Below, in pieces: positions 1-17,186 of a DNA stretch of 64,000 nucleotides. The stretch is from the IMG/VR virus record IMGVR_UViG_3300028558_000016, positions 1 to 64,000 of that record. One strand, given 5' to 3'. Positions within the stretch are counted from its first letter, which is position 1; every line of letters begins with the position of its first letter. The notes beneath the pieces were generated by a model. The model worked only from the letters and a program-made list of their open reading frames with translations. It searched no databases and was not told where the DNA came from. Both the position numbers and the translations under genes were made by a program.

Positions 1-308
1 TAAGTGCCCTCTTCTAAATCTAAGAATTTGTTCCAGGACCTAATAAGTCCCTCTATGTTGTCCTTGCCGACACTGTTTGCACTATGGACGTTTATGTCCA
101 CGTTCCTGAGATCGTATTTCATCTCATGGATCATCCACTTGACGCAATCGTATCCTGTTGGTATTCCGTCTCCAAGGTCATGGTCGAATGACATTTCGTT
201 TGGAAGTCCTTTGTCAATTATAACATTCTTGAACTCCTCAAAGTTTCTCACTATGGTCCATCCCTCAAAAAATGGAATCCTTTCGTCATCCAAATATAGC
301 TTGTACAT
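1..308 (-). CDS. Cyclic-phosphate processing receiver domain protein (cREC-like); stop codon straddles window edge
   Basis: Not in the ORF track. Manual translation: MYKLYLDDERIPFFEGWTIVRNFEEF...EMSFDHDLGDGIPTGYDCVKW...VHSANSVG. The LYLDDxR, SFDHDLG and VHSAN motifs are typical of this RNA-repair-associated receiver family. Confidence 0.75.
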   Translation of the reverse strand, partial: MYKLYLDDERIPFFEGWTIVRNFEEFKNVIIDKGLPNEMSFDHDLGDGIPTGYDCVKWMIHEMKYDLRNVDINVHSANSVGKDNIEGLIRSWNKFLDLEEGT

Positions 309-309
309 C

Positions 310-495
310 TTATTCAGGTTTTAAATGCGGGAACAATTTATAAAAACGTTTCCATGCTGTCTTGCGGCATTTTTTAGGATACCTTATTTTGTTCCTATTA
401 TCTCCGCTGCTTCCAACATGTGTGTGCTTGTTATCGCGTCTGTCTGGTTTAGGCATTTGCTTATAACTCCACCATCTATGCCATCTCGATTCCAT
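310..495 (-). CDS. Small basic hypothetical protein
   Basis: 61 aa ORF packed between the HAD and cREC genes on the same strand; Arg/Lys/Trp-rich. Confidence 0.55.
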   Translation of the reverse strand: MESRWHRWWSYKQMPKPDRRDNKHTHVGSSGDNRNKIRYPKKCRKTAWKRFYKLFPHLKPE

Positions 496-496
496 A

Positions 497-1039
497 TTAA
501 TAATTTTTTAGCTTATGAATATCTTCAGGTCCGTTTAGCACAACCCAATCTCTGTCCTTAAACACAAAATGAATTGTAAGCTTTATGTCAGGCCTCTTCG
601 TCCACAGCTCAGTGAAATTCTCAATGTGTTCGATCATGTCATCAAAGAATTCTATCTCCTTAACGTCAGGATAATGCTCATCGATTATTCTTATCGCTCG
701 GTCAACCTTCTTTTTCCCGTCATACTTCAATGAATGGTGATGGAAATAAAGCTTGTTCTTCTCGAGTATTGGCATGATGTTTGGCTTTAGCCTATACATC
801 CTGTTTGTCAACACAACCTTTGCTGCAGTGTAATCCTCAGTTGCACGCATGTAATGAGGAAGTATACACTCCAACGGTTTAATGTTGAATTCAGGCATGA
901 GGCTTTCCCATCTACCCCACCAACCATTATGAGGATATGGAACACCTTTAATCCTCTCGTATTCCTTCTTCCCTTCATCGGGAAGAGGAACATCGAGAAG
1001 AGTGCCGTCCATGTCAAATATGTAAAGTTTTGTTATCAT
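497..1039 (-). CDS. HAD-family phosphatase, Swiss Army Knife RNA-repair-like HAD
   Basis: N-terminal FDMDGT motif, GWWG segment, C-terminal FFDD motif; adjacent to an RNA ligase. Confidence 0.75.
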   Translation of the reverse strand: MITKLYIFDMDGTLLDVPLPDEGKKEYERIKGVPYPHNGWWGRWESLMPEFNIKPLECILPHYMRATEDYTAAKVVLTNRMYRLKPNIMPILEKNKLYFHHHSLKYDGKKKVDRAIRIIDEHYPDVKEIEFFDDMIEHIENFTELWTKRPDIKLTIHFVFKDRDWVVLNGPEDIHKLKNY

Positions 1040-1065
1040 TTATTTCTATTTACTAATTTACTAAA

Positions 1066-2487
1066 TTAAACAATTACATTATAGCCTTTGATCAAATCGT
1101 TGTACAATTCTTTACCATCGAAATCCATCATGTATCTCTTAGAGCTTTTTGGACCTCCGATGAAATCAAAGAAGAACCCTTGGTGCTTCTTCAACTTTCT
1201 TTCTACAACAAATCTCATTACTTTTGCTGCCAACTTCTTTCTCAAGTTGGTCGCAGTTTCATCGCCTCTGTCGGAAGCACATTCTCTTATAGAAGATATT
1301 TCATCACGAGTGAATCCCAGCTTCTCAAAATCAACTGTGTCGATCTCAGCGATGTCTTTCACGTGAGTCAATCCAAGCTTAGCAAGAACATCTGCTCTCA
1401 AACCTCTCGATTCAAAAGTGATTGCATCCTTGTGCTTTCTGTATTCAATGAACTCCTCGTAAGTGGAAATTTCAGAAGTCAACTTGTCAATTTCTTTTAA
1501 AGTTCTCTTCCATCCTTCTTGCAAGTGTTCAATCTCTTCTCCTCTTCCTGGGAAAGTCGCCTTGTATTCGTTCACGTTGTCCTCACCAGATCTAACGATG
1601 TCGATCAATCTCCAGAACGCAGTTGAGTCCTTGAAGAAGTGGATTGCACAGTAAGCTGGATTCTTCATTTTTACACGAGGGTATCCAAACTCAGTATGCT
1701 TTCCATAATCACAAACAACATAACCTTCCTCACGGTAAGTCATGCCATCGAAAGACTCTTTCAATTTATCTGGAGAAGAATTCAATGCAAGAGTTGGAGC
1801 CATTGGCACACCAAGATCTTTTGATATAATCTCAAGATCAACGAAAGAAACTTCTTCCAAAGTATCAAGCTTTCTTGCACCCAACAAATAGACAGCACTG
1901 TCTTGGTGTGGTGTAACAACAATGTTGTACTTAGTACAAAGCTCAAACGCCAAAGTATATCCATCATATTTCTTAAACAAAGCTTTTACCCACTCAGTTC
2001 TAAGATCACAATGTTCCATCATTCTCACATCGTCATCTTCTCTCTTAACAGTCTCCATGAAAGCGTGAACGAACAAATCCGAGAATGTTCCTCCAAGCTT
2101 AGTATAGTGAAAGTTATCCACATCACCTTCTCCGTTAGCAGTTCCAGTTGTTCCGAAGCAAACTTCTCCTGTAACGTAATCAGTGTAAACGTGAATCATT
2201 GTTCCATCCATCTTTTTGAAGATCCTTGCAGACTCCCAGTTTATAGGTGCTGCGTGTCCTTCTCCAAGGTTGAAGAATTTTCTGAATGCAATGGACATAA
2301 CTCTCCAAGTATCTTTCTCAACTACAAGTCCTCTCGCATCTCTAACTTCCTCGTTAGTGAAGTTGGATTCGATAGAATCGTACTTAAGCAATACCTTGTG
2401 AGGATAGTCCTTGTGCTTCAATTTGAAGTCAGCAAGAGTCTTCTCAAGACCGTGCTCTTTTAGGTATTTTGTTATTGCGAGTTCCAT
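1066..2487 (-). CDS. rnl1: T4 Rnl1-like RNA ligase with C-terminal extension
   Basis: EVRDARGLVVE, AFRKFFNLGE, motif I KMDGT, AFEL, EEGYVV, RVKMK. Confidence 0.85.
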   Translation of the reverse strand: MELAITKYLKEHGLEKTLADFKLKHKDYPHKVLLKYDSIESNFTNEEVRDARGLVVEKDTWRVMSIAFRKFFNLGEGHAAPINWESARIFKKMDGTMIHVYTDYVTGEVCFGTTGTANGEGDVDNFHYTKLGGTFSDLFVHAFMETVKREDDDVRMMEHCDLRTEWVKALFKKYDGYTLAFELCTKYNIVVTPHQDSAVYLLGARKLDTLEEVSFVDLEIISKDLGVPMAPTLALNSSPDKLKESFDGMTYREEGYVVCDYGKHTEFGYPRVKMKNPAYCAIHFFKDSTAFWRLIDIVRSGEDNVNEYKATFPGRGEEIEHLQEGWKRTLKEIDKLTSEISTYEEFIEYRKHKDAITFESRGLRADVLAKLGLTHVKDIAEIDTVDFEKLGFTRDEISSIRECASDRGDETATNLRKKLAAKVMRFVVERKLKKHQGFFFDFIGGPKSSKRYMMDFDGKELYNDLIKGYNVIV

Positions 2488-2498
2488 TTCAAATATGA

Positions 2499-3023
2499 TT
2501 AGTAATGTTTACTTTTTCTTTTCTTTTTTCTACAAACAAGGTCAGCAGCGCAAGAAGCCGCGTAGGCATCTGGCTTTGATCTTACCCTGTATCCGGCAGC
2601 TCTTATGAATCCCATTCCAGAATCGTAAGCAATGTTGCTTTTCCATCTTGGATTTGGATTCAAGTCAAGGTCGATGTCAACAAGCTTCTCCATTGGAGAA
2701 ATTCTTGCATAAACCCCTTCAAGCTCCTTTTCAAGGTATTCGCCAACAGCGAAAGCTCGTTCAACTTCGCCCCAAAGCTTTGAATACATGTCCTTAGCTC
2801 TTGGAACGTTGTCAATACTGAAAATGTAGTGGGCACCTGCACCAACGTGGTATACAAGAACAACCGTTGCATAACGTGTCTTGTTTTTTTGATGCTCGGA
2901 GTCACATCCAACATAGATGCGGATTCCGTTTGGTGATGTGGACATGTGAGTCTTGATGTATTCCCTCATGTAGATACCGAGGTCATCAATGAATGCACCG
3001 CCAAATTTTTTAAAGTTTTTCAT
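2499..3023 (-). CDS. RNase H-like YkuK/DUF458 family protein
   Basis: IYVGCDS, GAGAHYIF, KLWGEV, DIDLDLN and KPDAYAASCAAD motifs. Confidence 0.8.
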   Translation of the reverse strand: MKNFKKFGGAFIDDLGIYMREYIKTHMSTSPNGIRIYVGCDSEHQKNKTRYATVVLVYHVGAGAHYIFSIDNVPRAKDMYSKLWGEVERAFAVGEYLEKELEGVYARISPMEKLVDIDLDLNPNPRWKSNIAYDSGMGFIRAAGYRVRSKPDAYAASCAADLVCRKKKRKSKHY

Positions 3024-3139
3024 TTTCGTTTCTCCTTTCTCTGTGTGTTTGTTTTAACAGCATAAAAGAGAGAAACACACGTCTCAAAATTATACCGGTT
3101 TTTATCGGTTTGTTTCTGAGAACGCGTTTGGAAACTAAT

Positions 3140-3337
3140 CTAATTCATTTCGAACCATCTTCGTTTAAACATTATTCTCAGCCTCGCGTAAGTACGAAGT
3201 CGCGACCATTTAAAATAGACGCTTTTTGTAGTCCTATTTGACCCTCGCGGGGAAACATGACCACATCTTTTTATTAGAATGTGTTCTGCACATTTTAAAT
3301 CTTCAAACTCCTTCATATTACAATCTTTAAAGTCCAT
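3140..3337 (-). CDS. Hypothetical protein
   Basis: 65 aa ORF co-oriented with neighbours; no motif recognised. Confidence 0.45.
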   Translation of the reverse strand: MDFKDCNMKEFEDLKCAEHILIKRCGHVSPRGSNRTTKSVYFKWSRLRTYARLRIMFKRRWFEMN

Positions 3338-3355
3338 TTAATATTATATATCATT

Positions 3356-3646
3356 TTAAAATAATCCATTCTCGAGTATGTCAACGTGTTTCTTCAAAAC
3401 ATCTCCGTGACAACTTGACGGTTTGCACCAACATCCTAAAGTTTTTCCTTTTAATTCTCCCAATCGATCCATCAGGTCTTTATTGTTCAAAAGGTATTCC
3501 TCGTATTTTTCAATTGCTTCCTTTCTCGAGGAAACCTTAAACTCAGCAAGAGTTCCCTCTTTATGAGAATAAGGATTTCCCCAAATGGAAGGACGTCCAA
3601 TATAGACGTCGTACTTATCTTTCTTACAGTGGACAACTTTACACAT
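3356..3646 (-). CDS. DUF4326 domain protein
   Basis: VVHCKK..DVYIGRPSIWGNPY...LKGKTLGCWCKP..CHGDVL. Confidence 0.85.
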   Translation of the reverse strand: MCKVVHCKKDKYDVYIGRPSIWGNPYSHKEGTLAEFKVSSRKEAIEKYEEYLLNNKDLMDRLGELKGKTLGCWCKPSSCHGDVLKKHVDILENGLF

Positions 3647-3657
3647 TAATTAATTTC

Positions 3658-4347
3658 TTATGCGTGCAGCTGTCTAATGTTTCCCTTGTACAACTCCTTG
3701 ATGGTTATTTTTCTTCCTGTTACGTGATCAAGAACAAAACCATCCTGTTCTCTGTAAGTTCTTCTCTTGTCGTTTCTGTTTCCATAACCGATTTGATTGA
3801 ACCTCGTCTCTTTCACCTTGGCACCTATCGCACCATCATTAATGTCCTTGAGCCTTTCTTCAAGTCGTGCCCAAGCAGTCTCTTCATTTTTTTCTCTGGT
3901 CCTGTGCTCTTCAACTCTCACTATCATTCCAGTTGGAATATGAGTCAACACGCAAACAGTTTCTACCTTGTTTCGGTTTTGACCGCCGTTACCAGATCCA
4001 CGAGTGTACTTTCGATGCACGTCGTTTCTATTTAAGACAAATTTTGGTTGGGAGTTTTCTTCCATTACAGCTACCGTCACGGTGCTGGTCTGTACTCTTC
4101 CTCTCTTTTCAGTTGGAGGAACTCTTTGCCATCTATGTCCGCCTGATTCGTTCTCAAAGAACTTCCTGACTCCGTTTCCAGTCAGTCATAGCGAGACATA
4201 ACCTGGCATTCAGTGTTCTACTGCAGAAGCAAATTGATTGATGCTTGCGGCCTTTTGATAAATGTCCGCCATTTCATTGACGAGGAGCTTTGCATCTTCT
4301 CCTCCTTCTGCTGCTCGAATTTCGAGCTTGATCTTTTCTGTTTTCAT
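3658..4347 (-). CDS. Short class I peptide chain release factor (RF1/PrfH-like, 229 aa) with two in-frame TGA codons (4210-4212, 4186-4188)
   Basis: Manual translation from ATG 4347: [22 protein letters not shown]...[52 protein letters not shown]...TRGSGNGGQNRNKVET. The RF motifs EIRAxxGG, ESGGHRxQRVP (PxT) and GGQ lie in one frame; the track ORF 3658..4080 is only the 3' part. Confidence 0.85.
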
Positions 4348-4427
4348 TTTTTATTCGGGTTTATATTTAAAAATTAAGTACACTCGCCTTTCAACCGAGA
4401 TTAAGGAATACGGAATTTCTTCCATGC

Positions 4428-5015
4428 CTACTTAAGTTTCTTTTTCTTTGTCAATTCTATTAATTTCTCTCTTGCCAATTGTTGTTCAACATAATCAGCG
4501 ATAATTACTATAGTTGAATCGCTTATCCACATGTGGCTTCTTCCGTTCACAGTAAGAGAAAAATCTCCATCACTTGGATCAAGAACAACCTCTGTTATCT
4601 TCTTGATTGGATTGTGCTTCTCTTTATCTTTCGCATCTCGTTCTAACGAGAATTTTGCCATTATGTCGCTGTTCCATTTCTTTGCATTTTTCTTGCTTTC
4701 TCCGGTGTAATTGAAATACTCAACATATTCTTTCAAAGGATTTCCTCCGTTTGCATTATTCAAACCACCTTTTAAAGTGTTTGCGTCTTCCATAATGACG
4801 TTTAAGTTTGTCCAGTCCTTCACCTTCTTCCAATTCTTATTCACATACACCTTCGCACATTCAGCAACTATTTGCATTGCTGCAATGTGTTGTCTATATT
4901 CGTTGTAGAAATTAGATGTCACAGAAAATTTTGAAGATTGCACTGTCTTTTCGTTTTCCTTGTCAGTCATCGAAACCGGGCGCATCATCATTCCATATAT
5001 CTCATTCTTTTTCAT
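4428..5015 (-). CDS. Hypothetical protein
   Basis: 195 aa ORF with phage-like codon composition. Confidence 0.7.
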   Translation of the reverse strand: MKKNEIYGMMMRPVSMTDKENEKTVQSSKFSVTSNFYNEYRQHIAAMQIVAECAKVYVNKNWKKVKDWTNLNVIMEDANTLKGGLNNANGGNPLKEYVEYFNYTGESKKNAKKWNSDIMAKFSLERDAKDKEKHNPIKKITEVVLDPSDGDFSLTVNGRSHMWISDSTIVIIADYVEQQLAREKLIELTKKKKLK

Positions 5016-5271
5016 CTTCTTTTATTGTTAGGTCGATTTCTACTATCTTCCATGTCAAACATTCTTCGAGATTCTCCACAAAAACAGGATGAACCTGATT
5101 ATCTCCTTTTTCTTTTCTCAACCAAACACCTTTGTTCCATTGAGAAACCCACCAGCCTATAGTTCCATCTGGTGCTTTAACTTTAATTTTATTTAAACCG
5201 CCAAATCCTTCAGGAAGATCAGCAATGGTTTTTATCTCCTTGCCTTCAAGAATTATCTTTTTGTTTTTCAT
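5002..5271 (-). CDS. Hypothetical protein
   Basis: 89 aa ORF directly downstream of the last tRNA. Confidence 0.65.
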   Translation of the reverse strand: MKNKKIILEGKEIKTIADLPEGFGGLNKIKVKAPDGTIGWWVSQWNKGVWLRKEKGDNQVHPVFVENLEECLTWKIVEIDLTIKEDEKE

Positions 5272-5297
5272 AAAAGTAAATGTAATAAAAAATTTTG

Positions 5298-5370
5298 AGC
5301 CGATGACAGGGATCGAACCTGCGACCTCCTCTTTACGAAAGAGGCGCTCTACCAGCTGAGCTACATCGGC
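5298..5370 (-). tRNA. tRNA-Thr(CGT)
   Basis: GCCGATG acceptor, GCTC/GAGC D-stem, CCTCT-TTCGTAA-AGAGG anticodon arm, GCAGG-TTCGATC-CCTGT T-arm. Confidence 0.95.
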
Positions 5371-5374
5371 AAAT

Positions 5375-5457
5375 GAAACCGAGCTTTTATTTAGGGACTT
5401 AAGGCAGGTTGCTCTGCTCTGATATTTGCCCAGGAGAATCTTACTCCTATCGGTTTC
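5375..5457 (-). ncRNA. Candidate structured small RNA (element D) in the tRNA array
   Basis: 8-bp closing stem GAAACCGA/TCGGTTTC enclosing the hairpins TAGGAG/CTCCTG and GGCA/TGCC. Confidence 0.4.
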
Positions 5458-5547
5458 TCATGGCTTGTCGTCCTGAAACATTTTGTATACAAGCCAACCC
5501 ATCACAATAACTGCAATGACAATAACTATGTAACAAAATATATCCAT
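5458..5547 (-). CDS. 29-aa single-TM micropeptide
   Basis: Manual translation MDIFCYIVIVIAVIVMGWLVYKMFQDDKP*, lying between RNA genes. Confidence 0.45.
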   Translation of the reverse strand: MDIFCYIVIVIAVIVMGWLVYKMFQDDKP

Positions 5548-5548
5548 G

Positions 5549-5634
5549 TGCAGTAGGTGAGATTCGAACTCACAACCCCCTGATTGGAAGTCAGGTGCTC
5601 TATGCTTTCGCGTCCAATTAGGAGCTACTACTGC
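5549..5634 (-). tRNA. Atypical tRNA with TCC (Gly) anticodon, enlarged D-loop, Lys/Arg-like body
   Basis: GCAGTAG/CTACTGC acceptor with A73, 21-nt D-loop containing GC-GAAA-GC, anticodon arm CCTGA-CTTCCAA-TCAGG. Confidence 0.8.
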
Positions 5635-5660
5635 AAGTGCGAACTTTCCATCGCATTAAT

Positions 5661-5720
5661 TGGAGCAACCTCAGTTAACTGATTCGCATTTCTGCGAGGG
5701 GGGAGTTAACCTCTGGTTGC
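5661..5720 (-). ncRNA. CCA-ended hairpin RNA (element A)
   Basis: GCAACC..GTTAAC..TCGCA-GAAA-TGCGA..GTTAAC..GGTTGC-T-CCA. Confidence 0.6.
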
Positions 5721-5725
5721 GTAAT

Positions 5726-5773
5726 TGGAGCCGAGGGGCCGTTCTCCAACGGTGAGTTCCCTTTCAACTCGGC
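5726..5773 (-). ncRNA. CCA-ended hairpin RNA (element B)
   Basis: GCCGAG..GGG..CCGTT-GGAG-AACGG-CCC-CTCGGC-T-CCA. Confidence 0.6.
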
Positions 5774-5778
5774 ATGTG

Positions 5779-5869
5779 CGGGGAAGATTGGAATCGAACC
5801 AATTAGTTTGATTTGCAGAAGACATTCTTTTTAAACAGAATGGTGCTCAGCCACCCGAGCATCTTCCCC
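5779..5869 (-). tRNA. Aberrant tRNA (Cys GCA-like remnant) with inserted hairpin; possible pseudo-tRNA
   Basis: GGGGAAG/CTTCCCC acceptor, GCTC/GAGC D-stem, ATTGG-TTCGATT-CCAAT T-arm. The central region has a CATTCT/AGAATG hairpin followed by CT-GCA-AA-TCAAA-CTA. Confidence 0.6.
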
Positions 5870-5874
5870 TTTTA

Positions 5875-6057
5875 TTATTTTCTCTTTCTCTCTTCGTCTA
5901 AATATCTATCATGTTCGTCTTTTGAATAGATCTCATAGTAACCACATTTTACTTTGTAATAAAATGGTGACATGTATTTCCATTCCTTGTTAACATCAAT
6001 GAATTTAGATTTTTCTAAAATCTGATTTTCCTCATCCGTCGGTTTGATTGTAATCAT
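5875..6057 (-). CDS. Hypothetical protein
   Basis: Track ORF 5875..6120; the in-frame ATG at 6057 (MITIKPT...) is the likelier start. Confidence 0.5.
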   Translation of the reverse strand: MITIKPTDEENQILEKSKFIDVNKEWKYMSPFYYKVKCGYYEIYSKDEHDRYLDEERKRK

Positions 6058-6195
6058 CGTTTTGTTTTTAGTTATTAAATAGGATGGGAAAACTTTAAGC
6101 GATAGTCTTTCGACAGGCAAGTTATTTTTTCATCGATGATTGATCAAGTCACCTCAAAATAAAATACTTTTCTACACTTCAGCACTTTCCCTCTG

Positions 6196-6268
6196 AGCGG
6201 AAAACGGGGCTCGAACCCGCGACCTTAACCTTGGCAAGGTTACGCTCTACCAACTGAGCTATTTCCGC
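6196..6268 (-). tRNA. tRNA-Gly(GCC)
   Basis: GCGGAAA acceptor, U73, TAACC-TTGCCAA-GGTTA; canonical cloverleaf. Confidence 0.95.
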
Positions 6269-6269
6269 A

Positions 6270-6400
6270 TGGTGCAGTGTAATTAAAAGGGTTGGACTTA
6301 TCTTCCATTCGTCAATGGCTCTTACCAACTTTCGATGTCACGATTAATTTTAAGCGCAAAACGATTCTATTGTCGAATTTTCTATTTGCGCCGACACTGC
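6270..6400 (-). ncRNA. 131-nt multi-stem RNA with 7-bp acceptor-like stem and ACCA end (element C)
   Basis: GCAGTGT/ACACTGC-A-CCA closing; internal stems GCGCAAA/TTTGCGC, AATTAA/TTAATT, GTTGG/CCAAC, CCATT-GACG-AATGG. Confidence 0.6.
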
Positions 6401-6407
6401 ATTTTTG

Positions 6408-6480
6408 AGCGGGAGACGAGGTTCGAACTCGCGACCTATAGCTTGGAAGGCTATCGCTCTACCAACTGAGCTACTCCCGC
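6408..6480 (-). tRNA. tRNA-Gly(TCC)
   Basis: GCGGGAG acceptor, U73, ATAGC-CTTCCAA-GCTAT; canonical. Confidence 0.95.
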
Positions 6481-6518
6481 GTGCGGACATTGTTTCGGGT
6501 ACAACGTCCAAAACCTAA

Positions 6519-6592
6519 TGGGGCCAGGATCGAACTCGCGTCCGACGAATGGAAGCTAATGAGGCCATCCAAACCGCTCATTATCGCCTGGC
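6519..6592 (-). ncRNA. 74-nt CCA-ended tRNA-like RNA lacking canonical arms (element E)
   Basis: GCCAGG/CCTGGC-C-CCA closing, TAATGAG/CTCATTA hairpin, GAGTTCGATC T-loop-like motif without a T-stem. Confidence 0.55.
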
Positions 6593-6645
6593 ATTTGTTG
6601 ATGATACACAACATTATATACCGACTGTATAAAAATGTTTTAATG

Positions 6646-6718
6646 TGACCCCGGTGGGGATCGAACCCACAACCACCTGATTAAGAGTCAGGAGCTCCAC
6701 CAATTGAGCTACAGAGTC
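6646..6718 (-). tRNA. tRNA-Lys(CTT)
   Basis: GACTCTG/CGGGGTC acceptor, CCTGA-CTCTTAA-TCAGG. Confidence 0.95.
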
Positions 6719-6748
6719 ATTTTGTTGATGCAATACGTCAAAGATCGT

Positions 6749-6973
6749 TCATTTCATGAAAAGATGTTTAATTCTTTCCATATCTACTTCAATAGTTTTA
6801 ATGTTCAACTTCTCTCCAGTCTTTTTAAAATGATCATACCAAAGTCTAACCTTTTCAGATTTTATTATCTGACCATTATAATTTTTCCTTTTCAACCATT
6901 CCTTTCCAAAATATAAAATTCGTTTTTCTGTTATTCTCGAATTCATTATATGTTTAAAAACTTTTTCAATCAT
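6749..6973 (-). CDS. Hypothetical protein within the tRNA array
   Basis: 74 aa ORF fitting exactly between two tRNAs. Confidence 0.55.
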   Translation of the reverse strand: MIEKVFKHIMNSRITEKRILYFGKEWLKRKNYNGQIIKSEKVRLWYDHFKKTGEKLNIKTIEVDMERIKHLFMK

Positions 6974-6974
6974 G

Positions 6975-7059
6975 TAGCGCTGGTGAGACTCGAACTCACA
7001 CTACCGTTAAGGAACCCGCTTATGAGGCGGGCACAATTACCACATCTGTTCACAGCGCT
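6975..7059 (-). tRNA. tRNA with CAT anticodon on a class II (long variable arm) scaffold
   Basis: AGCGCTG/CAGCGCT, A73, CCCGC-CTCATAA-GCGGG, 15-nt variable region, GTGAG-TTCGAGT-CTCAC. Confidence 0.85.
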
Positions 7060-7101
7060 ATCTCGTCTGCTTCTTTGTAGGCCCCGTACTATATCTACAA
7101 A

Positions 7102-7371
7102 TCATTTGGTGGGGCTGTCGGAAACAGCAGACTTTACTTTATTTTCTTTCTTATACGTCTTCAAGAATTCCAAAGCATTTTGCAATTCTTCGACCCTGTT
7201 CTTGTTAGAAGGAATGCTTCCATTTGCCTGTCTAACAGTCATCGGATCCGATGACGATAAATTCTTTTCAAAGAACTCTAAATTTCTTTCTTCCATTAAG
7301 AGTCTTTCTCTTAATAATTTTGCCACGTATGGCATCGGATCATATTGTCCTCTTTCTTCTTGTGTCTTCAT
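7102..7371 (-). CDS. Hypothetical protein within the tRNA array
   Basis: 89 aa ORF starting 2 nt after the CCA of the upstream tRNA. Confidence 0.6.
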   Translation of the reverse strand: MKTQEERGQYDPMPYVAKLLRERLLMEERNLEFFEKNLSSSDPMTVRQANGSIPSNKNRVEELQNALEFLKTYKKENKVKSAVSDSPTK

Positions 7372-7372
7372 T

Positions 7373-7464
7373 TGGTGCGCCCGGAGGGATTCGAACCCCC
7401 GTTGGTGTTATTCACACGTCTGATTAAAAGTCAGGACCATTCGGCCAGCTATGGGAACGGACGC
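7373..7464 (-). tRNA. tRNA with TTT (Lys) anticodon and long variable arm
   Basis: GCGTCCG/CGGGCGC-A-CCA, CTGA-CTTTTAA-TCAG, V-arm GTGT-GAATA-ACAC, GGGGG-TTCGAAT-CCCTC. Confidence 0.85.
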
Positions 7465-7478
7465 ATTTGTTTTTATTG

Positions 7479-7552
7479 TGCGCCCGGTTGGGTTCGAACC
7501 AACGACCCCCTGATTAAAAGTCAGGTGCATCTACCAGCTGAGCTACGAGCGC
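7479..7552 (-). tRNA. tRNA-Lys(TTT)
   Basis: GCGCTCG/CGGGCGC, CCTGA-CTTTTAA-TCAGG; canonical. Confidence 0.95.
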
Positions 7553-7774
7553 AAATATTTGGATATGGAAATCCTCTTGCATCTCGTATTTCAGCGAGAT
7601 GCCTTTACCGTTTATATTTCATTTTAGTTTTCATTATCATTATATTTTTTAAAAGAACAGAATACGTTTTTTACCTTTTCATTAAAATTGAAATGCTCGT
7701 TAGAGCTTGTTTGTTTTGCTGTACGTATTCTTTTTTCTTTTTAATTTCTACCACCATTCAGGATGCTTTTGTTT

Positions 7775-7880
7775 TGGCAAAGATTGGATTCGAACCAATG
7801 ACCTCTCGTTTACTTTCCTTAACAATGTTTCCATTGACGGGGATTTCAGGCGAGCGCTCTACCAACTGAGCTACTTATCC
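7775..7880 (-). tRNA. tRNA-Phe(GAA) with a 33-nt insertion after position 37 (intron-like)
   Basis: Standard D- and T-arms. Anticodon arm CTCG-C-CT-GAA-A-[33 nt including CAATG-GAAA-CATTG]-A-A-CGAG; the acceptor stem has two mismatches. Confidence 0.7.
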
Positions 7881-7908
7881 TTTTGTAATGCTGCATGCAT
7901 CCTTTTTG

Positions 7909-7981
7909 AGCCGAGAACCGGGGTCGAACCGGTGACCTTCCGCTTACAAGGCGGGTGCTCTACCAACTGAGCTATCTCGGC
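7909..7981 (-). tRNA. tRNA-Thr(TGT)
   Basis: GCCGAGA/TCTCGGC, CCCGC-CTTGTAA-GCGGA. Confidence 0.95.
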
Positions 7982-7984
7982 AAT

Positions 7985-8119
7985 TTACAAATATTCGTTC
8001 TTGTTACACTCAAAAAACAAAACCCACAACTCGTGAATTCTCTCATTCACTTCATCATTTCCATTTTGTCTCTTGTTTAACAAAGACATCAATTCGTTTA
8101 CTATGTCATCCTTTTTCAT
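7985..8119 (-). CDS. 44-aa hypothetical protein between Thr tRNAs
   Basis: Manual translation MKKDDIVNELMSLLNKRQNGNDEVNERIHELWVLFFECNKNEYL*. Confidence 0.45.
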   Translation of the reverse strand: MKKDDIVNELMSLLNKRQNGNDEVNERIHELWVLFFECNKNEYL

Positions 8120-8122
8120 TTG

Positions 8123-8195
8123 AGCCTACAACCGGGATCGAACCGGTCACCTCATCCTTACCAAGGATGTGTTCTACCAACTGAACTATGTGGGC
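8123..8195 (-). tRNA. tRNA-Thr(GGT)
   Basis: GCCCACA/TGTAGGC, CATCC-TTGGTAA-GGATG. Confidence 0.95.
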
Positions 8196-8317
8196 AATGT
8201 CTCCGATCGTAAAAATAATCTCTCAAATATTATCAAGATCATTTCCATTCTTTATTAAGCGGTCGGACACGCTACTACTAAATCCAAAAGTTGCAACTTC
8301 TGAATTTTTCATCTTTG

Positions 8318-8413
8318 AAGCGGGAGTGAGATTCGAACTCACGTTCTCTTTCGAGTTGAGGCTTATGAGGCCCTGCTGGCGTTTTGCAACTTCCATCTCC
8401 AGTCGATCCCGCA
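8318..8413 (-). tRNA. Initiator-like tRNA(CAT) with expanded D-loop and a V-arm
   Basis: T1:T72 mismatch plus GCGGGA/TCCCGC, D-stem CTGG/CCAG with long loop, GGGC-CTCATAA-GCCT, V-arm CTC-GAAA-GAG. Confidence 0.75.
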
Positions 8414-8419
8414 ATGTGT

Positions 8420-8541
8420 GCCGCTTCCTGGACCCTATCACCAGGATTTTCTTTGGACTACAGAAGAGAGATTCGCCAATTTTTTTCCATAGAATTAAAC
8501 CATATACGGCGCTTTTCTACACTCTCAACTTTCGCAAGCGG
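8420..8541 (-). ncRNA. Candidate structured RNA (element F)
   Basis: Closing CCGCT/AGCGG; internal GAGAG/CTCTC, CGCCG/TGGCG and TCCTGG/CCAGGA stems. Confidence 0.4.
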
Positions 8542-8552
8542 ACTTTTATTTG

Positions 8553-8624
8553 TAGCGGGAGATGGATTCGAACCACCGACCTCAGGGTTATGAGCCCTGC
8601 GAGCTACCCCTGCTCTATCCCGCA
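8553..8624 (-). tRNA. tRNA-fMet(CAT)
   Basis: 1:72 mismatch, three consecutive G-C pairs in the anticodon stem (CAGGG-CTCATAA-CCCTG), A73. Confidence 0.95.
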
Positions 8625-8631
8625 ATATTTA

Positions 8632-8747
8632 TTGGAACGCATACCAACTTCGCAAGAAGTTTCGGGTCAACAGTGACTCTTGTCAAGCTGCCTCCTACAT
8701 GATTGATCAAGCTCCATTCTTTCAGGGAGCACCATGGGCGGTTCCAA
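8632..8747 (-). ncRNA. Candidate structured RNA (element G), first RNA after the attenuator
   Basis: TTGGAAC/GTTCCAA closing; GCTCC/GGAGC, TGAC/GTCA and AACTT/AAGTT hairpins. Confidence 0.45.
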
Positions 8748-8782
8748 TTTTTTAATTTCAATAATTTCTTCAAAGAACAAGA

Positions 8783-8814
8783 CAAAAAAAATCCCAAACG
8801 TTTGGTTTGGGATT
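8783..8814 (-). terminator. Intrinsic terminator of the leader (attenuator)
   Basis: AATCCCAAAC-CAAAC-GTTTGGGATT 10-bp stem running into a U8 tract (the first two U also close the stem). Confidence 0.9.
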
Positions 8815-8837
8815 CGTAATTTCGTTATTAGTTAACG

Positions 8838-8933
8838 TCATTCGCACATCCCAAAACACATAGGCTTACCTTTCCCAGTTTTCGTGGTAGTAGTTGTACC
8901 TGTAGTTATTTTGAATATTTGTTGCGAATTCAT
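8838..8933 (-). CDS. Attenuator leader peptide (31 aa; Thr/Gly/Lys/Met/Cys/Phe-rich)
   Basis: ATG 8933 gives MNSQQIFKITTGTTTTTKTGKGKPMCFGMCE-TGA. It has 8 Thr codons using all four ACN; TTTGGGAT in codons 27-29 is complementary to ATCCCAAA in the terminator 5' arm. Confidence 0.8.
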   Translation of the reverse strand: MNSQQIFKITTGTTTTTKTGKGKPMCFGMCE

Positions 8934-8989
8934 GACGTTTTAATTTGTTATTCTACTCTATATACTTATCTTTGTTTCAATTTCTTTTA

Positions 8990-8997
8990 CAAATGTA
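8990..8997 (-). promoter_or_regulatory. Bacteroidota sigma70-type -7 element upstream of the leader
   Basis: TACATTTG matches TAnnTTTG, about 55 nt upstream of the leader ATG. Confidence 0.65.
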
Positions 8998-11900: not shown

Positions 11901-12288
11901 TTATTTCTTTATATTTTAAAATTATTAAATCTATATTTTTCGCTAATTCATCTTCTAAATTGCTTTCAAATACTATTGCCATGTTCTCGCAATATTTTCT
12001 GTAATTGTCTGCAAGAACTCCGGTCTCACACCAAGCTTTACATGATTCATAAAGCTCAATTATATCTGAATTAGGAATGTAATCCAGCACACCGTATCTG
12101 TCCTTATTAATATTATTCAAGTCTACCAACATTGTTTTTGCTGTGAATGTATCTTTCATTATCTTGCTTGCTGTGGCATCAATATTTGCTGCGGCTTCAG
12201 CCATCGTCTTGTCATCACCAAGCAAAACAGCCATTACTTGTTCCTGAGCATCCTGAAAGATCTTTTTTATTTTTTCTTCTTTTGTCAT
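11857..12288 (-). CDS. Hypothetical protein
   Basis: 143 aa ORF with ATGA overlap with the sigma gene. Confidence 0.6.
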   Translation of the reverse strand: MTKEEKIKKIFQDAQEQVMAVLLGDDKTMAEAAANIDATASKIMKDTFTAKTMLVDLNNINKDRYGVLDYIPNSDIIELYESCKAWCETGVLADNYRKYCENMAIVFESNLEDELAKNIDLIILKYKEINGNSTGLTNGETQA

Positions 12289-12914
12289 ATTTTTCTTCTT
12301 TCGTATTTCTTTCTAACTTTTTTAATATTTAACAGTACGTTTCTCTCTTCATCTATCATACGTTCCAGAACAGAATAAGACACTCCAAGTTCTTTTGCCA
12401 TGCTTGTTTTAGTCACATCTCCTTCTTCTCTTAATAATATTTTTAATGCTATAAACTTAGAGTCGTTTTTAATCTTGTATTTTGCTATGTCGAGTTTGTC
12501 TAATGACGTGTCATACTCTTTCATCATTAAATTTTTGATTTGAAATGGAACGTTTGAATCTATTCCAGCATATCTTCTGTAAATAGACAAGGTTTCATTT
12601 CCAGATAAATGCAAATTTATTTCATTACATCTATCATACTTAATATCATTCTTTATCCATTGAAGACATTCCATGTATGCTATAGTATGAAGCCATGTTG
12701 TAAATTTTGATTTCGTCTTATCGAATCCAGTCCGGTATAATATTAATTTTAAAAAAGTCTGTGATACAATGTCATCCGCTGCTATTGAACCAACTTTTTT
12801 AGAAGCAAATCTTTTAATTCTTGGTCCAAATATCAAAAATGCGTCTTCTATTAATTCAGATTTTTCGGAAATATTTTCCTGTATGTTTAATATTTTAAGC
12901 TTTTCATTCTTCAT
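12285..12914 (-). CDS. ECF-like RNA polymerase sigma factor
   Basis: ADDIVSQTFLKL, FDKTKSKFTTWLHTIA (region 2), C-terminal HTH MAKELGVS. Confidence 0.8.
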   Translation of the reverse strand: MKNEKLKILNIQENISEKSELIEDAFLIFGPRIKRFASKKVGSIAADDIVSQTFLKLILYRTGFDKTKSKFTTWLHTIAYMECLQWIKNDIKYDRCNEINLHLSGNETLSIYRRYAGIDSNVPFQIKNLMMKEYDTSLDKLDIAKYKIKNDSKFIALKILLREEGDVTKTSMAKELGVSYSVLERMIDEERNVLLNIKKVRKKYERRKI

Positions 12915-13290: not shown

Positions 13291-14475
13291 TTATATTGCA
13301 ATAGGCGCTTTAATCGCCGGGTGACTTTTGTATCCAACAAATTCAAAGTTCTCATACTTATATTCAATGATATGACCATTGTCACCATGCAAAGAGCTAT
13401 AAACTGTAGGTGGTTTTTTAAGTCTAAGCTTACATAATTCCATTGGCTCTCTATTTAATTGTTCATCGACTTGATCGAAATGATTTACGTATATGTGACA
13501 GTCTCCTCCGTTAAATACAAGCTCCTCAGGAACCATATTAACAGACTGAGCAATCATTTCCAATAACAATCCATAAGAAGCAATATTAAATGGCAATCCC
13601 AAAAACAAATCAACTGAACGTTGTTGCCACATTAGTGATATAGCACGTTTAGGAACATTCTGTTGGTCCAATTCAAAATCTTTCCAATCACTTTTATCTC
13701 CAGCCCAATTTTTAATGAACCACTCATTTCTTTCTTCTGTACTCATCTCACGCGTCCAACATTGGAATCCATAATGACATGGAGGAAGAAGCATCTTGTC
13801 TATCTCGGCAACGTTCCATGCATTCACCATCAATCGTCTTGAGTCTGGATTAGTCTTTAAGTCCTGTATCAAACGAAGTATTTGATCATACCACAGAGAA
13901 CCAAAGTCTTCTTTACCGGTATCTTCGTCCTCGTAATGCAACCATCCCTGCCACTGTCTCCATTGTTTTCCATAAACTGGTCCAAGCTCTCCCCATACAT
14001 CAGAAAATGAATCACGTGAAGCTGCAAACAATCCACTCAATTCGGATTCTTTTATTTTTTCAACAAACTCTTCTAATGTTAACGGAGGATGTTTTTCCAA
14101 TTGTTCTCTAATATATTTCACTGACATTGCATCTTCGGTTGTATCGGCTCTTCTAATAGAAGCCTCTAAGTCTTCTTTTAATTTTTCATGATGCTTCATG
14201 TAATTCTGCCAAGGCCATTCATTCCAAATGTTAACTCCATTGTCGACGAGATATTTTATGTTGTGTCCTCCTTGAAGGAACCACAGCAATTCATGGATGA
14301 CGCTTTTAGTGTGAATCTTCTTTGTCGTTAACAATGGAAATCCATCTTGCATGTTGAACTTTAAAGTTCGACCAAAAACAGAAACTGTTCCAGTTCCGGT
14401 TCTGTCAGATTTTCTAACTCCTTTTTCTCTAACTTCTTTTAAAAGATCGAGATATGCTTTATCTGTGTTGTTCAT
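13291..14475 (-). CDS. thyA: Thymidylate synthase with insertions
   Basis: DRTGTGT, FPLLTTKK, LGPVYGKQWR, NPDSRRL, LPPCH, QRSVDLFLGLPFNIASY. Confidence 0.97.
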   Translation of the reverse strand: MNNTDKAYLDLLKEVREKGVRKSDRTGTGTVSVFGRTLKFNMQDGFPLLTTKKIHTKSVIHELLWFLQGGHNIKYLVDNGVNIWNEWPWQNYMKHHEKLKEDLEASIRRADTTEDAMSVKYIREQLEKHPPLTLEEFVEKIKESELSGLFAASRDSFSDVWGELGPVYGKQWRQWQGWLHYEDEDTGKEDFGSLWYDQILRLIQDLKTNPDSRRLMVNAWNVAEIDKMLLPPCHYGFQCWTREMSTEERNEWFIKNWAGDKSDWKDFELDQQNVPKRAISLMWQQRSVDLFLGLPFNIASYGLLLEMIAQSVNMVPEELVFNGGDCHIYVNHFDQVDEQLNREPMELCKLRLKKPPTVYSSLHGDNGHIIEYKYENFEFVGYKSHPAIKAPIAI

Positions 14476-16967: not shown

Positions 16968-17186
16968 TTATTCATCTATTTTGACGTCTCTCATTGTGAT
17001 TATCATGTACAAGGCCCAACCGACAACAGGCACATAGAACCATAGCCACCAGGAATTCCAAAATGCCACTGCGAGCACTGCTGGAATGATGCTACAACAA
17101 AATGCAAAAATTAATAATGCTAAAAGCTTTAATATCAGTTTCATGTTGTTTTTATTGTTGTTCTGTTTATGTTGTACTGAATCCAA
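16968..17186 (-). CDS. Small membrane protein
   Basis: Two hydrophobic segments; the start is probably the internal MKLIL. Confidence 0.55.
   Translation of the reverse strand: MDSVQHKQNNNKNNMKLILKLLALLIFAFCCSIIPAVLAVAFWNSWWLWFYVPVVGWALYMIITMRDVKIDE

What the first reader, a model, noticed from the sequence alone, without database searches (positions are those of the whole stretch)
1..8997. Integrated phage translation-rescue region: sensor, replacement tRNAs, decoy-like RNAs, conditional RF and RNA repair
Seen: everything from the promoter at 8997 to the window start is co-oriented. The order is leader/attenuator, 14 tRNA-type genes plus about 7 structured RNAs, the UGA-gated release factor, DUF4326, an RNase H-like protein, Rnl1 ligase, a HAD phosphatase and a cyclic-phosphate receiver protein. 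I saw no strong terminator between the array and these genes. Established: T4 Pnk/Rnl1 heals and reseals PrrC-cut tRNA-Lys, and PrfH-like factors act in ribosome rescue. Inference: an inducible counter-defence unit against tRNA/ribosome-damaging abortive infection, combining replacement, repair and rescue.
Basis: inference. Interest (0 to 1): 0.85.

Follow-up and report, generated by a model that had tools for sequence, protein, structure and literature searches.

The report
Demand-sensing phage tRNA and release-factor island
In this huge soil phage, a short leader peptide and terminator appear to switch on a block of phage tRNA genes only when those same tRNAs run short; a stop-codon-gated release factor and an RNA-repair cassette follow, and both control devices recur across many huge phages.

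Summary
Everything from about 8997 down to position 1 lies on the minus strand:
- a promoter-like box
- a 31-codon leader ORF with an intrinsic terminator
- 14 tRNA-type genes
- a release factor with two in-frame TGA codons
- DUF4326, an RNase H-like protein, an Rnl1 ligase, a HAD phosphatase and a cREC domain cut by the contig end

**Sensor.** This is the strongest part. The leader is rich in Thr, Lys, Gly, Met, Ile and Asn, the amino acids served by the downstream tRNAs. Its 3' end can pair with the terminator's 5' arm. Matched leader/array pairs recur in unrelated huge phages (permutation z = 9.6) and precede seven sub-arrays of the complete genome LR745206.1.

**Release factor.** It is an RF1-type protein lacking domain 1, not PrfH. 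Of 75 non-redundant relatives, 69 carry either in-frame TGA or a prfB-like CTT-TGA/TAG +1 frameshift site.

**What is not supported.**
- "One operon" and "counter-defence" are not shown.
- The repair genes are syntenic only in the closest relative.
- A conserved structured element precedes the repair genes.
- No polynucleotide kinase gene was found.
- No RNA data exist.

Supply-and-demand control of translation explains the data as well as defence does.

The parts
8990..8997 (-). Promoter-like box TACATTTG (fits the Bacteroidota -7 consensus TAnnTTTG). It is followed by a leader region of about 60 nt that is nearly identical in L006.
   Evidence: It is one of only three such boxes on this strand in 9.3 kb, which by my own estimate is about the chance number, so this is consensus-level evidence only.
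8838..8933 (-). Leader ORF of 31 codons with a TGA stop. Codons 10-23 (8906-8865) are all Thr, Gly or Lys. In total 22 of 31 codons are Thr/Lys/Gly/Met/Ile/Asn.
   Evidence: Homologous leaders occur in L006 (5103-5198) and L025 (3868-3960).
8845..8860 (-). Antiterminator segment inside the 3' end of the leader ORF. It pairs with the 5' arm of the terminator.
   Evidence: duplex -11.7 kcal/mol, and the nascent RNA without the 3' arm folds into this pairing at -15.5; only 0.3% of shuffles do as well. L025 changes this segment and both terminator arms together.
8784..8815 (-). Intrinsic terminator of the attenuator: an 11-bp stem, a 5-nt loop and a T-run.
5297..8624 (-). tRNA array of 14 tRNA-type genes.
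- Met 8552-8624
- Met-like 8317-8413
- Thr GGU 8122-8195
- Thr UGU 7908-7981
- Ile-like with insert 7775-7880
- Lys UUU 7478-7552
- long Lys UUU 7373-7464
- long Met 6974-7059
- Lys CUU 6645-6718
- Gly UCC 6407-6480
- Gly GCC 6195-6268
- odd Asn-like 5778-5869
- Gly UCC-like 5548-5634
- Thr CGU 5297-5370

Small ORFs lie between them at 7985-8119, 7102-7371, 6749-6973 and 5875-6120.
6515..6600 (-). Conserved non-tRNA structured RNA: an acceptor-like stem enclosing two hairpins, followed by CCCA.
   Evidence: The alignment as a whole averages 86% identity to L006. The core is about 96% by my reading of it, with two compensatory changes in one hairpin. No Rfam family matches.
4428..5271 (-). Two ORFs of unknown function: orf89 (5271-5002) and orf195 (5015-4428).
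   Evidence: orf195 is 63% identical in L006. No family was found for either.
3658..4347 (-). RF1-type release factor without domain 1. It has in-frame TGA at 4212-4210 and 4188-4186, a PPT (PxT) motif and GGQ, and ends in TAA.
   Evidence: dN/dS is 0.085-0.10 across the part that holds the TGAs.
3140..3646 (-). DUF4326 protein (3646-3356) and orf65 (3337-3140).
   Evidence: DUF4326 lies beside the RF in four other loci.
3024..3125 (-). Conserved structured intergenic element with a TATAAT box. Its second hairpin covers the GGAG just ahead of the RNase H-like gene's start codon. It is a possible boundary or separate control point.
   Evidence: nearly identical to L006 over roughly 55 nt; folding z = -4.95 here and -6.2 in L006.
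3..3023 (-). RNA-repair cassette.
- RNase H-like PF04308, 3023-2499
- Rnl1-type RNA ligase, 2487-1066, with KMDG
- HAD (Swiss-army-knife type) phosphatase, 1039-497, with DMDGT
- cREC domain, 308-3, cut by the contig end
   Evidence: The same order occurs in L006.

Best explanation
The region is a translation-maintenance island made of three modules, each with its own control.

**1. Ribosome-mediated attenuator ahead of the tRNA array.**
- Transcription starts near 8990 and the 31-codon leader is translated.
- If charged Thr, Lys and Gly tRNAs (and also Met, Ile, Asn) are plentiful, the ribosome runs to the UGA stop. There it covers segment 8860-8845, the hairpin at 8815-8789 forms, and transcription ends.
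- If those tRNAs are scarce, the ribosome stalls in codons 10-23. The freed segment pairs with the terminator's 5' arm, and RNA polymerase reads on into the genes for those same tRNAs.
- The new tRNAs relieve the stall and close the loop.

**2. A UGA-gated release factor.**
- No terminator separates the array from orf89, orf195, the RF, DUF4326 and orf65, so they may share these transcripts.
- Full-length RF1-type factor without domain 1 is made only when ribosomes read through two UGA codons in leaky contexts (UGA-A and UGA-C).
- Its yield should therefore rise when RF2-dependent termination is slow.

**3. An RNA end-healing and sealing cassette.** The RNase H-like, Rnl1, HAD and cREC genes sit behind their own conserved structured leader.

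**Shown:** the sequence features, their conservation, and the match between leaders and arrays.
**Inferred:** stalling, antitermination, co-transcription, read-through and every enzyme activity.

The trigger could be host tRNA cleavage or simply codon demand during infection.
For: **Attenuator**
- The leader, terminator and antiterminator are present in the window, L006 and L025. L025 changes all three pairing segments together.
- Leader composition follows array content even where the arrays differ:
  - L004: Arg/Thr/Val/Ala/Gly/Pro
  - L043: Asn/His/Thr/Lys
  - L121: Arg/Met/Asp/Trp/Gln, and a second leader with Asn/Gln
  - L090: Pro/Ala/Trp/Arg
  - L133: His/Ile/Glu/Pro
- Shuffling the leader/array pairing gives 208 observed against 139 +/- 10, with a maximum of 179 in 5000 shuffles. 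With LR745206.1 added, it gives 269 against 159.5 +/- 11.4, z = 9.6.
- In LR745206.1, seven sub-arrays each have a matched leader and a terminator 7-100 nt (five of them within 25 nt) before the first tRNA.
- In most strong cases the antiterminator lies in the 3' part of the leader ORF.

**Release factor**
- TGA occurs at homologous sites in L001-L004 and L006.
- Classes among 75 non-redundant loci:
  - 40 with a frameshift site: CTTTGAN 33, CTTTAGC 7. Many carry an upstream GGAGG.
  - 29 with in-frame TGA. The next base is A (25) or C (14), never G or T.
  - 5 intact.
- dN/dS is about 0.09 across the TGAs.
- The rest of the window uses TGA as a stop codon, and the portal and other long genes are intact.

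**Transcription units**
- No other clean terminator was found on this strand.
- tRNA-Thr(CGU) lies upstream of the RF in six loci, with no terminator between them in the five checked.
Against: - There are no transcript or ribosome data.
- The promoter call rests on a consensus box found at about chance frequency, and a phage sigma-like gene lies nearby.
- L006's antiterminator scores weakly in one of the two tests.
- The window's terminator lies about 170 nt from the first tRNA, not the roughly 20 nt typical of LR745206.1.
- Two UGAs in series would give very little protein by plain leakiness. No tRNA(UCA) was found in the window or in LR745206.1.
- By its motifs the RF should not read UGA, so the gate would not be self-regulating in the prfB sense.
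- RF and repair genes are together only in the window and L006, with a weak case in L058.
Confidence: 0.6

Rival explanations
1. One inducible operon runs from 8997 to the window start, is built specifically against tRNA- or ribosome-cutting abortive infection, and joins replacement tRNAs, decoy RNAs, a PrfH-like rescue factor and repair enzymes.
For: - Everything is co-oriented and there is no clean internal terminator.
- The whole order is kept in L006.
- Lys, Thr and Asn tRNAs are, from my memory of the PrrC and PARIS literature (not checked in the papers listed), among the known targets of such nucleases.
- tRNA supply plus an RNA ligase, a HAD phosphatase and cREC is the counter-measure set described for jumbo phages (PMC7824862).
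- Expanded tRNA paralogues exist that could resist or soak up nucleases.
Against: - The RF is RF1-like with an intact codon-reading motif, not PrfH-like.
- The repair genes are not linked to the RF or to tRNA arrays in most relatives.
- A conserved structured element with a TATAAT box separates the repair genes.
- No kinase was found.
- In LR745206.1, attenuators precede arrays for nearly all amino acids, which points to general supply control rather than a response to one nuclease.
Confidence: 0.2
2. The in-frame TGAs are decoded as Trp by a phage-driven code switch using a suppressor tRNA. The RF would then be part of a late 'code change' programme like that of TGA-recoded gut phages.
For: - In several relatives the TGA sits exactly at the conserved Gly-Trp position of RF1 (L004, L007, L087, L099, L100, L102).
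- L099 has a tRNA(UCA) about 1.6 kb from its RF.
- RF1 together with a suppressor tRNA is the module reported for TGA-recoded Jade phages (bioRxiv 10.1101/2021.08.26.457843).
Against: - In the window, TGA ends 18 of 69 long ORFs, and no other gene needs read-through.
- The portal gene here and the terminase gene in L006 are intact in the standard code.
- No tRNA(UCA) was found in the window or in the 635-kb genome LR745206.1, whose RF has the same two TGAs.
- Forty relatives use a frameshift site instead, which needs no suppressor.
Confidence: 0.12
3. The RF gene is decaying. Only the C-terminal GGQ piece, starting at the internal Met near 4066, is made, and it acts as an ArfB-like codon-independent hydrolase. 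This matches the original annotation of the gene in LR745206.1.
For: - An internal ATG follows the TGAs.
- The published annotation of LR745206.1 calls only a 138-aa C-terminal CDS.
- The GGQ part has a weak ArfB match of 34.6 bits.
Against: - The part upstream of that Met is the best-conserved part of the gene, with dN/dS 0.085-0.10. It keeps PPTE and the domain-2 start motif in frame across the TGAs in lineages only 45-74% identical.
- The stops are always TGA and always followed by A or C.
- Forty relatives carry the prfB-type slippery site at the same place.
Confidence: 0.05

Closest known systems
Leader-peptide transcription attenuators of amino-acid operons (trpL, thrL, hisL, pheL; also pheM ahead of pheST)
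   Same: - A short ORF with a run of regulatory codons.
- An intrinsic terminator just downstream.
- An alternative pairing that a ribosome at the stop codon would block.
- The Thr-rich core resembles thrL.
   Different: - The controlled genes are tRNA genes, not biosynthetic or synthetase genes. The sensor therefore reads the decoding capacity that its own products supply.
- Each leader mixes several amino acids to match a mixed array.
- The device is phage-encoded and repeated along one genome.
- No such case turned up in four literature searches.
prfB (RF2) programmed +1 frameshift autoregulation
   Same: - A release-factor gene is interrupted by an RF2-specific UGA.
- Thirty-three of 75 non-redundant relatives carry the same CTT TGA N slippery site, many with an upstream GGAGG.
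   Different: - The window's gene needs read-through of two in-frame UGAs, not a frameshift.
- The site lies in domain 2, not at codon 26.
- The protein is RF1-like, so by its motifs it should not read UGA itself.
- Seven relatives use CTT TAG C, a stop never seen in prfB (PMC12421855). That survey also found no programmed recoding in bacterial prfA.
PrfH (RF-H) with RtcB, a ribosome rescue and RNA repair pair
   Same: - A release-factor paralogue without domain 1.
- It sits next to an RNA ligase, which fits the idea of coupling peptide release to RNA repair (PMC6514570).
   Different: - Sequence similarity is far closer to RF1 than to PrfH: 141 against 49.5 bits, and 104 against 49 bits in the PDB.
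- The PxT codon-reading motif is kept.
- The ligase is Rnl1, not RtcB.
- The linkage is not conserved.
T4 Pnkp/Rnl1 tRNA repair and jumbo-phage RNA repair sets (Rnl1/Rnl2, HAD, cREC, 2H)
   Same: - An Rnl1-family ligase with the KxDG lysine motif.
- A stand-alone Swiss-army-knife-type HAD phosphatase.
- A cREC domain, a linkage already described (PMC7824862).
   Different: - No polynucleotide 5' kinase domain turned up among the region's proteins.
- An RNase H-like PF04308 protein heads the cassette.
- The ligase has about 100 extra C-terminal residues.
- The HAD match is below the Pfam cut-off.
Code-change modules of stop-codon-recoded phages (suppressor tRNA + synthetase + RF)
   Same: - A phage-borne RF1-type gene lies among tRNA genes.
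- TGA is read as sense inside a gene.
   Different: - Only this one gene carries in-frame TGA.
- No suppressor tRNA was found.
- Structural genes use the standard code.

Membership tests
Leader-peptide transcription attenuator | Short translated ORF with clustered regulatory codons | tested here: met
   ORF 8933-8838. Codons 10-23 are all Thr, Gly or Lys. The frame and length are kept in L006. Translation itself was not tested.
Leader-peptide transcription attenuator | Intrinsic terminator between the leader and the regulated genes | tested here: met
   11-bp stem plus T-run at 8815-8784, about -14 kcal/mol.
Leader-peptide transcription attenuator | Mutually exclusive antiterminator that a ribosome at the stop codon would mask | tested here: met
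   Segment 8860-8845 pairs with the terminator's 5' arm at -11.7 kcal/mol and lies 5-22 nt before the stop codon. The pairing co-varies in L025, and the same layout appears in L004, L043, L075 and L121.
Leader-peptide transcription attenuator | Regulatory codons correspond to the function of the regulated genes | tested here: met
   Leader residues match the identities of the downstream tRNAs. Permutation z = 9.6 over 45 leader/array groups.
Leader-peptide transcription attenuator | Read-through rises when the cognate charged tRNA is limiting | not testable with these tools
   This needs reporter or in vitro assays. No RNA run holds the locus.
Release factor 1 (prfA) | PxT codon-recognition tripeptide and GGQ hydrolysis motif | tested here: met
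   PPT and GGQ are invariant in seven homologues. The best PDB and NCBIfam matches are RF1.
Release factor 1 (prfA) | Full four-domain architecture including N-terminal domain 1 | tested here: not met
   The match starts at about position 104 of the 347-position RF1 model. The score of 141 is below the cut-off of 400.
PrfH (RF-H) | Closest similarity to the PrfH family, loss of the stop-codon reading motif, and an RtcB neighbour | tested here: not met
   prfH scores 49.5 bits against a cut-off of 166.65, compared with 141 for RF1. PxT is kept. The neighbouring ligase is Rnl1. The only shared feature is the lack of domain 1.
prfB-type programmed +1 frameshift | CUU UGA N slippery site with an upstream Shine-Dalgarno-like element and a change of frame | tested here: not met
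   The window's gene stays in frame through both TGAs. The feature is met in 33 of 75 non-redundant relatives, and 7 more have CTT TAG C.
Stop-codon-recoded (code 4) phage | In-frame TGA in many genes and a tRNA(UCA) | tested here: not met
   Only the RF has internal TGA flanked by homology on both sides. No suppressor tRNA was found in the window or in LR745206.1.
T4-type tRNA healing and sealing pathway | Rnl1 ligase with the KxDG nucleotidyl-lysine motif | tested here: met
   PF09511 at 52.6 bits and PHROG 562 at 129.7 bits. KMDG aligns with KEDG of T4 Rnl1.
T4-type tRNA healing and sealing pathway | 3' end healing (phosphatase and/or cyclic phosphodiesterase) | tested here: inconclusive
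   HAD_SAK_1 scores 23.4 bits, below the cut-off of 25.6, but DMDGT is present. cREC_REC scores 95.5 bits but is truncated.
T4-type tRNA healing and sealing pathway | 5' polynucleotide kinase | tested here: not met
   No kinase domain turned up among the region's proteins that were scanned with Pfam, NCBIfam and PHROGs, or among the L006 neighbours scanned with Pfam. The rest of the 482-kb genome was not searched.

The most novel reading that the evidence does not exclude
Huge phages may run a modular, codon-by-codon supply control for translation.
- Each tRNA sub-array carries its own leader peptide that 'test-drives' the codons those tRNAs read. The array is transcribed only when decoding is slow.
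- A domain-1-less RF1 is gated by UGA read-through or a prfB-like frameshift, and so reports termination capacity.

Together these would form a virus-encoded translation homeostat. The same circuit would also fire automatically when host defences cleave tRNAs.
Probability: 0.5. Interest if true: 0.92.

Novelty: new variant of a known kind. Interest (0 to 1): 0.87.

Why it matters
Why phages carry tRNA genes, and how those genes are controlled, has been debated for decades between two views: codon supply and escape from tRNA-cutting defences.

**The attenuator.**
- A leader peptide that samples exactly the codons served by the downstream tRNAs would be direct, sequence-encoded evidence that the phage measures decoding speed and supplies tRNAs on demand.
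- I know of no other case where tRNA genes are under ribosome-mediated attenuation.
- It gives a simple, portable test system: a leader and terminator fused to a reporter.

**The release factor.**
- It shows that UGA-based recoding of a release-factor gene is not confined to prfB.
- It has arisen or been transferred into an RF1-type lineage in three forms. A 12,000-genome survey found no programmed recoding in bacterial prfA.

**Annotation.** Both devices also correct existing records. The RF of a published 635-kb genome is recorded only as its C-terminal piece.

Tried and rejected
- **Nearest DNA relatives.** A megablast of the region against the GenBank phage collection found nothing. Relatives came from protein-level searches instead.
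- **RNA evidence.** No RNA run holds this DNA. The single read-laying run could only confirm the sequence in four DNA runs.
- **Whole-genome TGA recoding.** Rejected.
- **Suppressor tRNA in the closest complete genome.** None was found among about 60 tRNAs. ARAGORN can miss odd tRNAs.
- **A dedicated leader just ahead of the tRNA-Thr(CGU)-RF pair in five loci.** None was found.
- **Function of orf195, orf89, orf65 and the small ORFs in the array.** Pfam, NCBIfam and PHROGs gave no credible family match for any of them, and the protein atlas, run on orf195 only, found none.
- **'Seven structured RNAs'.** Folding z-scores of most candidate stretches are unremarkable. Only 6515-6600, 7655-7733 and the element at 3024-3125 stand out.
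- **Selenocysteine insertion at the second TGA.** I considered this because a hairpin starts right after it. I did not pursue it, because the hairpin is also conserved coding sequence and the first TGA has none.
- **Burroughs and Aravind 2016 RNA-repair paper.** It is not held in the library.
- **Sequence beyond window position 1.** It exists in another assembly but could not be read.

Full report
**Source and context**

The window starts at position 1 of IMG/VR contig UViG_3300028558_000016 (482,156 bp) from a rhizosphere metagenome. Its GC content is 36%, and 61 of 69 long ORFs lie on the minus strand. TGA ends 18 of those 69 ORFs.

The release factor's closest relatives in GenBank are the 634-735 kb genomes of Al-Shayeb et al. 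2020 (PMC7162821). Genes upstream of the region include a clamp loader, a sigma-70-like factor, thymidylate synthases, methyltransferases and a T4-like portal. All of them are intact in the standard code.

**Checking the observation**

- a leader and terminator
- 14 tRNA-type genes
- two unknown ORFs
- the release factor with TGA at codons 46 and 54
- DUF4326 and orf65
- an RNase H-like PF04308 protein, an Rnl1 ligase and a HAD phosphatase
- a cREC domain cut by the contig end

The two TGAs are not assembly errors. Contigs from four DNA runs are identical over them.

The claim of about seven structured RNAs is only partly right. Most gaps in the array hold small ORFs. One non-tRNA RNA, at 6515-6600, is conserved with compensatory changes.

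**The sensor**

Between TACATTTG (8997-8990) and the first tRNA lie a 31-codon ORF (8933-8838) and the only clean terminator on this strand (8815-8784).

- Codons 10-23 of the ORF are all Thr, Gly or Lys. They use all four Thr codons, both Lys codons, and GGU and GGG.
- The array encodes Thr GGU, UGU and CGU, Lys UUU and CUU, and Gly GCC and UCC, together with Met, Ile-like and Asn-like genes.
- The last codons of the ORF (8860-8845) can pair with the terminator's 5' arm at -11.7 kcal/mol. The nascent RNA lacking the 3' arm folds that way.
- A ribosome sitting at the stop codon would cover this segment. A ribosome stalled in the Thr run would leave it free.

L006 keeps the ORF's length and frame. 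L025 has a homologous leader in which the segment and both terminator arms have changed together.

**Generality of the sensor**

A mechanical scan of 132 loci looked for a small ORF plus a terminator ahead of three or more tRNAs. It found leaders whose composition follows quite different arrays:
- L004: Arg, Thr, Val, Ala, Gly, Pro
- L043: Asn, His, Thr, Lys
- L121: Arg, Met, Asp, Trp, Gln, and separately Asn, Gln
- L090: Pro, Ala, Trp, Arg
- L133: His, Ile, Glu, Pro
- L075 and L087: Glu, Arg, Gly

Shuffling which array goes with which leader gave 139 +/- 10 against 208 observed, with none of 5000 shuffles reaching the observed value.

I then fetched the complete genome LR745206.1. Seven sub-arrays each have a terminator 7-100 nt (five within 25 nt) before the first tRNA and a matched leader. 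For example, a Gln-rich leader precedes three tRNA-Gln genes, and a Ser/Arg-rich leader precedes tRNA-Arg and tRNA-Ser. With these added, z = 9.6.

Four literature searches found no description of such a device.

**The release factor**

The protein matches RF1 from about model position 104 onward, so it lacks domain 1.

| Comparison | RF1 | RF2 | PrfH |
|---|---|---|---|
| NCBIfam (bits) | 141 | 78 | 49.5 |
| PDB (bits) | 104 | about 50 | 49 |

PPT (a PxT motif), the Gln and Thr that read the third stop-codon base, and GGQ are all conserved.

The part spanning the TGAs is under strong purifying selection, with dN/dS 0.085-0.10.

Among 75 non-redundant phage homologues:
- 29 have in-frame TGA. 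This is 39 codons, each followed by A or C. Those are, to my knowledge from E. coli work, the leaky contexts.
- 40 need a +1 shift at CTT TGA N (33) or CTT TAG C (7). Many have GGAGG upstream, as in prfB.
- 5 are intact.

In-frame TGA goes with low-GC phages and the frameshift site with high-GC phages. In some lineages the TGA replaces the conserved Trp of RF1, so Trp is the likely residue inserted.

Neither the window nor LR745206.1 encodes a detectable tRNA(UCA). The published annotation of LR745206.1 records only the C-terminal 138 residues, so the recoding had been missed. A recent survey found no programmed recoding in bacterial prfA (PMC12421855).

What the gate senses is inferred. By its motifs the factor should not read UGA. 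The gate would therefore report RF2 activity or UGA suppression rather than the factor's own level.

**One unit or several**

L006 (RF 74% identical) keeps the whole order apart from DUF4326 and orf89.

Other relatives do not keep it:
- No other window gene gave a tblastn hit in L001-L004.
- DUF4326 sits beside the RF in four other loci, the RNase H-like gene in one and Rnl1 in one.
- Fifty of 86 loci have tRNAs within 8 kb of the RF.
- tRNA-Thr(CGU) lies upstream of the RF in six loci, with no terminator between them in the five checked.

Between orf65 and the RNase H-like gene lies an element nearly identical to L006 over roughly 55 nt. It contains TATAAT, folds far better than shuffled sequence (z = -4.95 and -6.2), and covers the GGAG ahead of the start codon. 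I read this as a separate control point for the repair cassette.

No 5' kinase domain turned up among the region's proteins.

**Verdict**

- The sensor and the conditional release factor are real sequence features with wide comparative support. To my knowledge they are undescribed.
- The repair cassette is a known kind.
- The idea of a single counter-defence operon is not established. General supply-and-demand control of translation explains the same facts and fits the genome-wide spread of the attenuators better.
- All functional steps remain inferences until tested.

Noticed in passing
window 7373-7464 and 6974-7059 (-); L006 6650-6739; L025 5676-5866; L162 49293-49558: Lys(UUU/CUU) and Met(CAU) tRNAs with a long, base-paired variable arm sit beside normal-length tRNAs with the same anticodon. 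Seven long Lys tRNAs from four phages fold alike, and 17 of 25 pairs show compensatory changes. About 8% of tRNAs in these arrays (50 of 596) are 80 nt or longer without being Leu, Ser or Tyr.
   Followed up: partly
window 7775-7880 (-); L006 6128-6234: An Ile(GAU)-like tRNA (Rfam 51 bits) has a 33-nt insert in the anticodon loop that extends the arm into a rod capped by a GAAA hairpin. It is 92% identical in L006. It is too short for a group I intron. Al-Shayeb et al. also note an intron-bearing Ile tRNA in another huge phage.
   Followed up: partly
window 5548-5634 (-); L006 8746-8832; L025 4743-4832: A Gly(UCC)-type tRNA has a 21-nt D-loop. It is 92% identical between the window and L006, which is among the best-conserved elements of the array.
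   Followed up: partly
window 5778-5869 (-): A 92-nt tRNA-like gene is called Asn(GUU) by ARAGORN. It folds with an 8-nt anticodon loop and a long unpaired variable region, has a weak tRNA-Sec-model match, and has no counterpart in L006.
   Followed up: partly
window 6515-6600 (-); L006 8185-8265: A conserved small RNA shaped like a tRNA without a D-arm: an acceptor-like stem, two hairpins and a CCCA tail. No Rfam family matches it.
   Followed up: partly
L026, L028/L029, L030, L043, L050, L061, L097: Seven phage RF genes use CTT TAG C instead of CTT TGA N at the shift site. TAG is the RF1-specific stop and has never been seen in prfB. In these lineages the gate could be truly self-regulating.
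   Followed up: no
L099 10154-10225; L057 9488-9560 and 11962-12033; L102 14999-15077; L043 13891-13963: Suppressor-type tRNAs lie within a few kb of the RF gene in some relatives: UCA in L099, CUA in L057 and L102, and UUA in L043.
   Followed up: no
L156-L168 (LR745206.1), leaders at 342380, 343630, 365029, 366081, 387700, 406703, 407638: The seven tRNA-array leaders in this genome share an N-terminal pattern (MKTIN, MTT or MNTITN) and end shortly before a terminator that lies 7-100 nt (mostly about 20 nt) from the first tRNA.
   Followed up: partly
window 12285-12914 (-), 13291-14475 (-), 17141-18034 (-): A phage sigma-70-like factor and two thymidylate-synthase paralogues lie just upstream of the region. 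The sigma factor means that host promoter consensus may not apply here.
   Followed up: no
window 1: The window begins at the end of the IMG/VR contig. A Logan contig of one DNA run carries on for about 8 kb past it, so the remainder of the cREC gene and its neighbours exist but could not be read.
   Followed up: no
window 7655-7733 (-): An AT-rich stretch closed by a 9-bp long-range stem and holding two small hairpins (z = -3.5) lies in the 222-nt gap between the Ile-like and Lys tRNAs. Its function is unknown.
   Followed up: no
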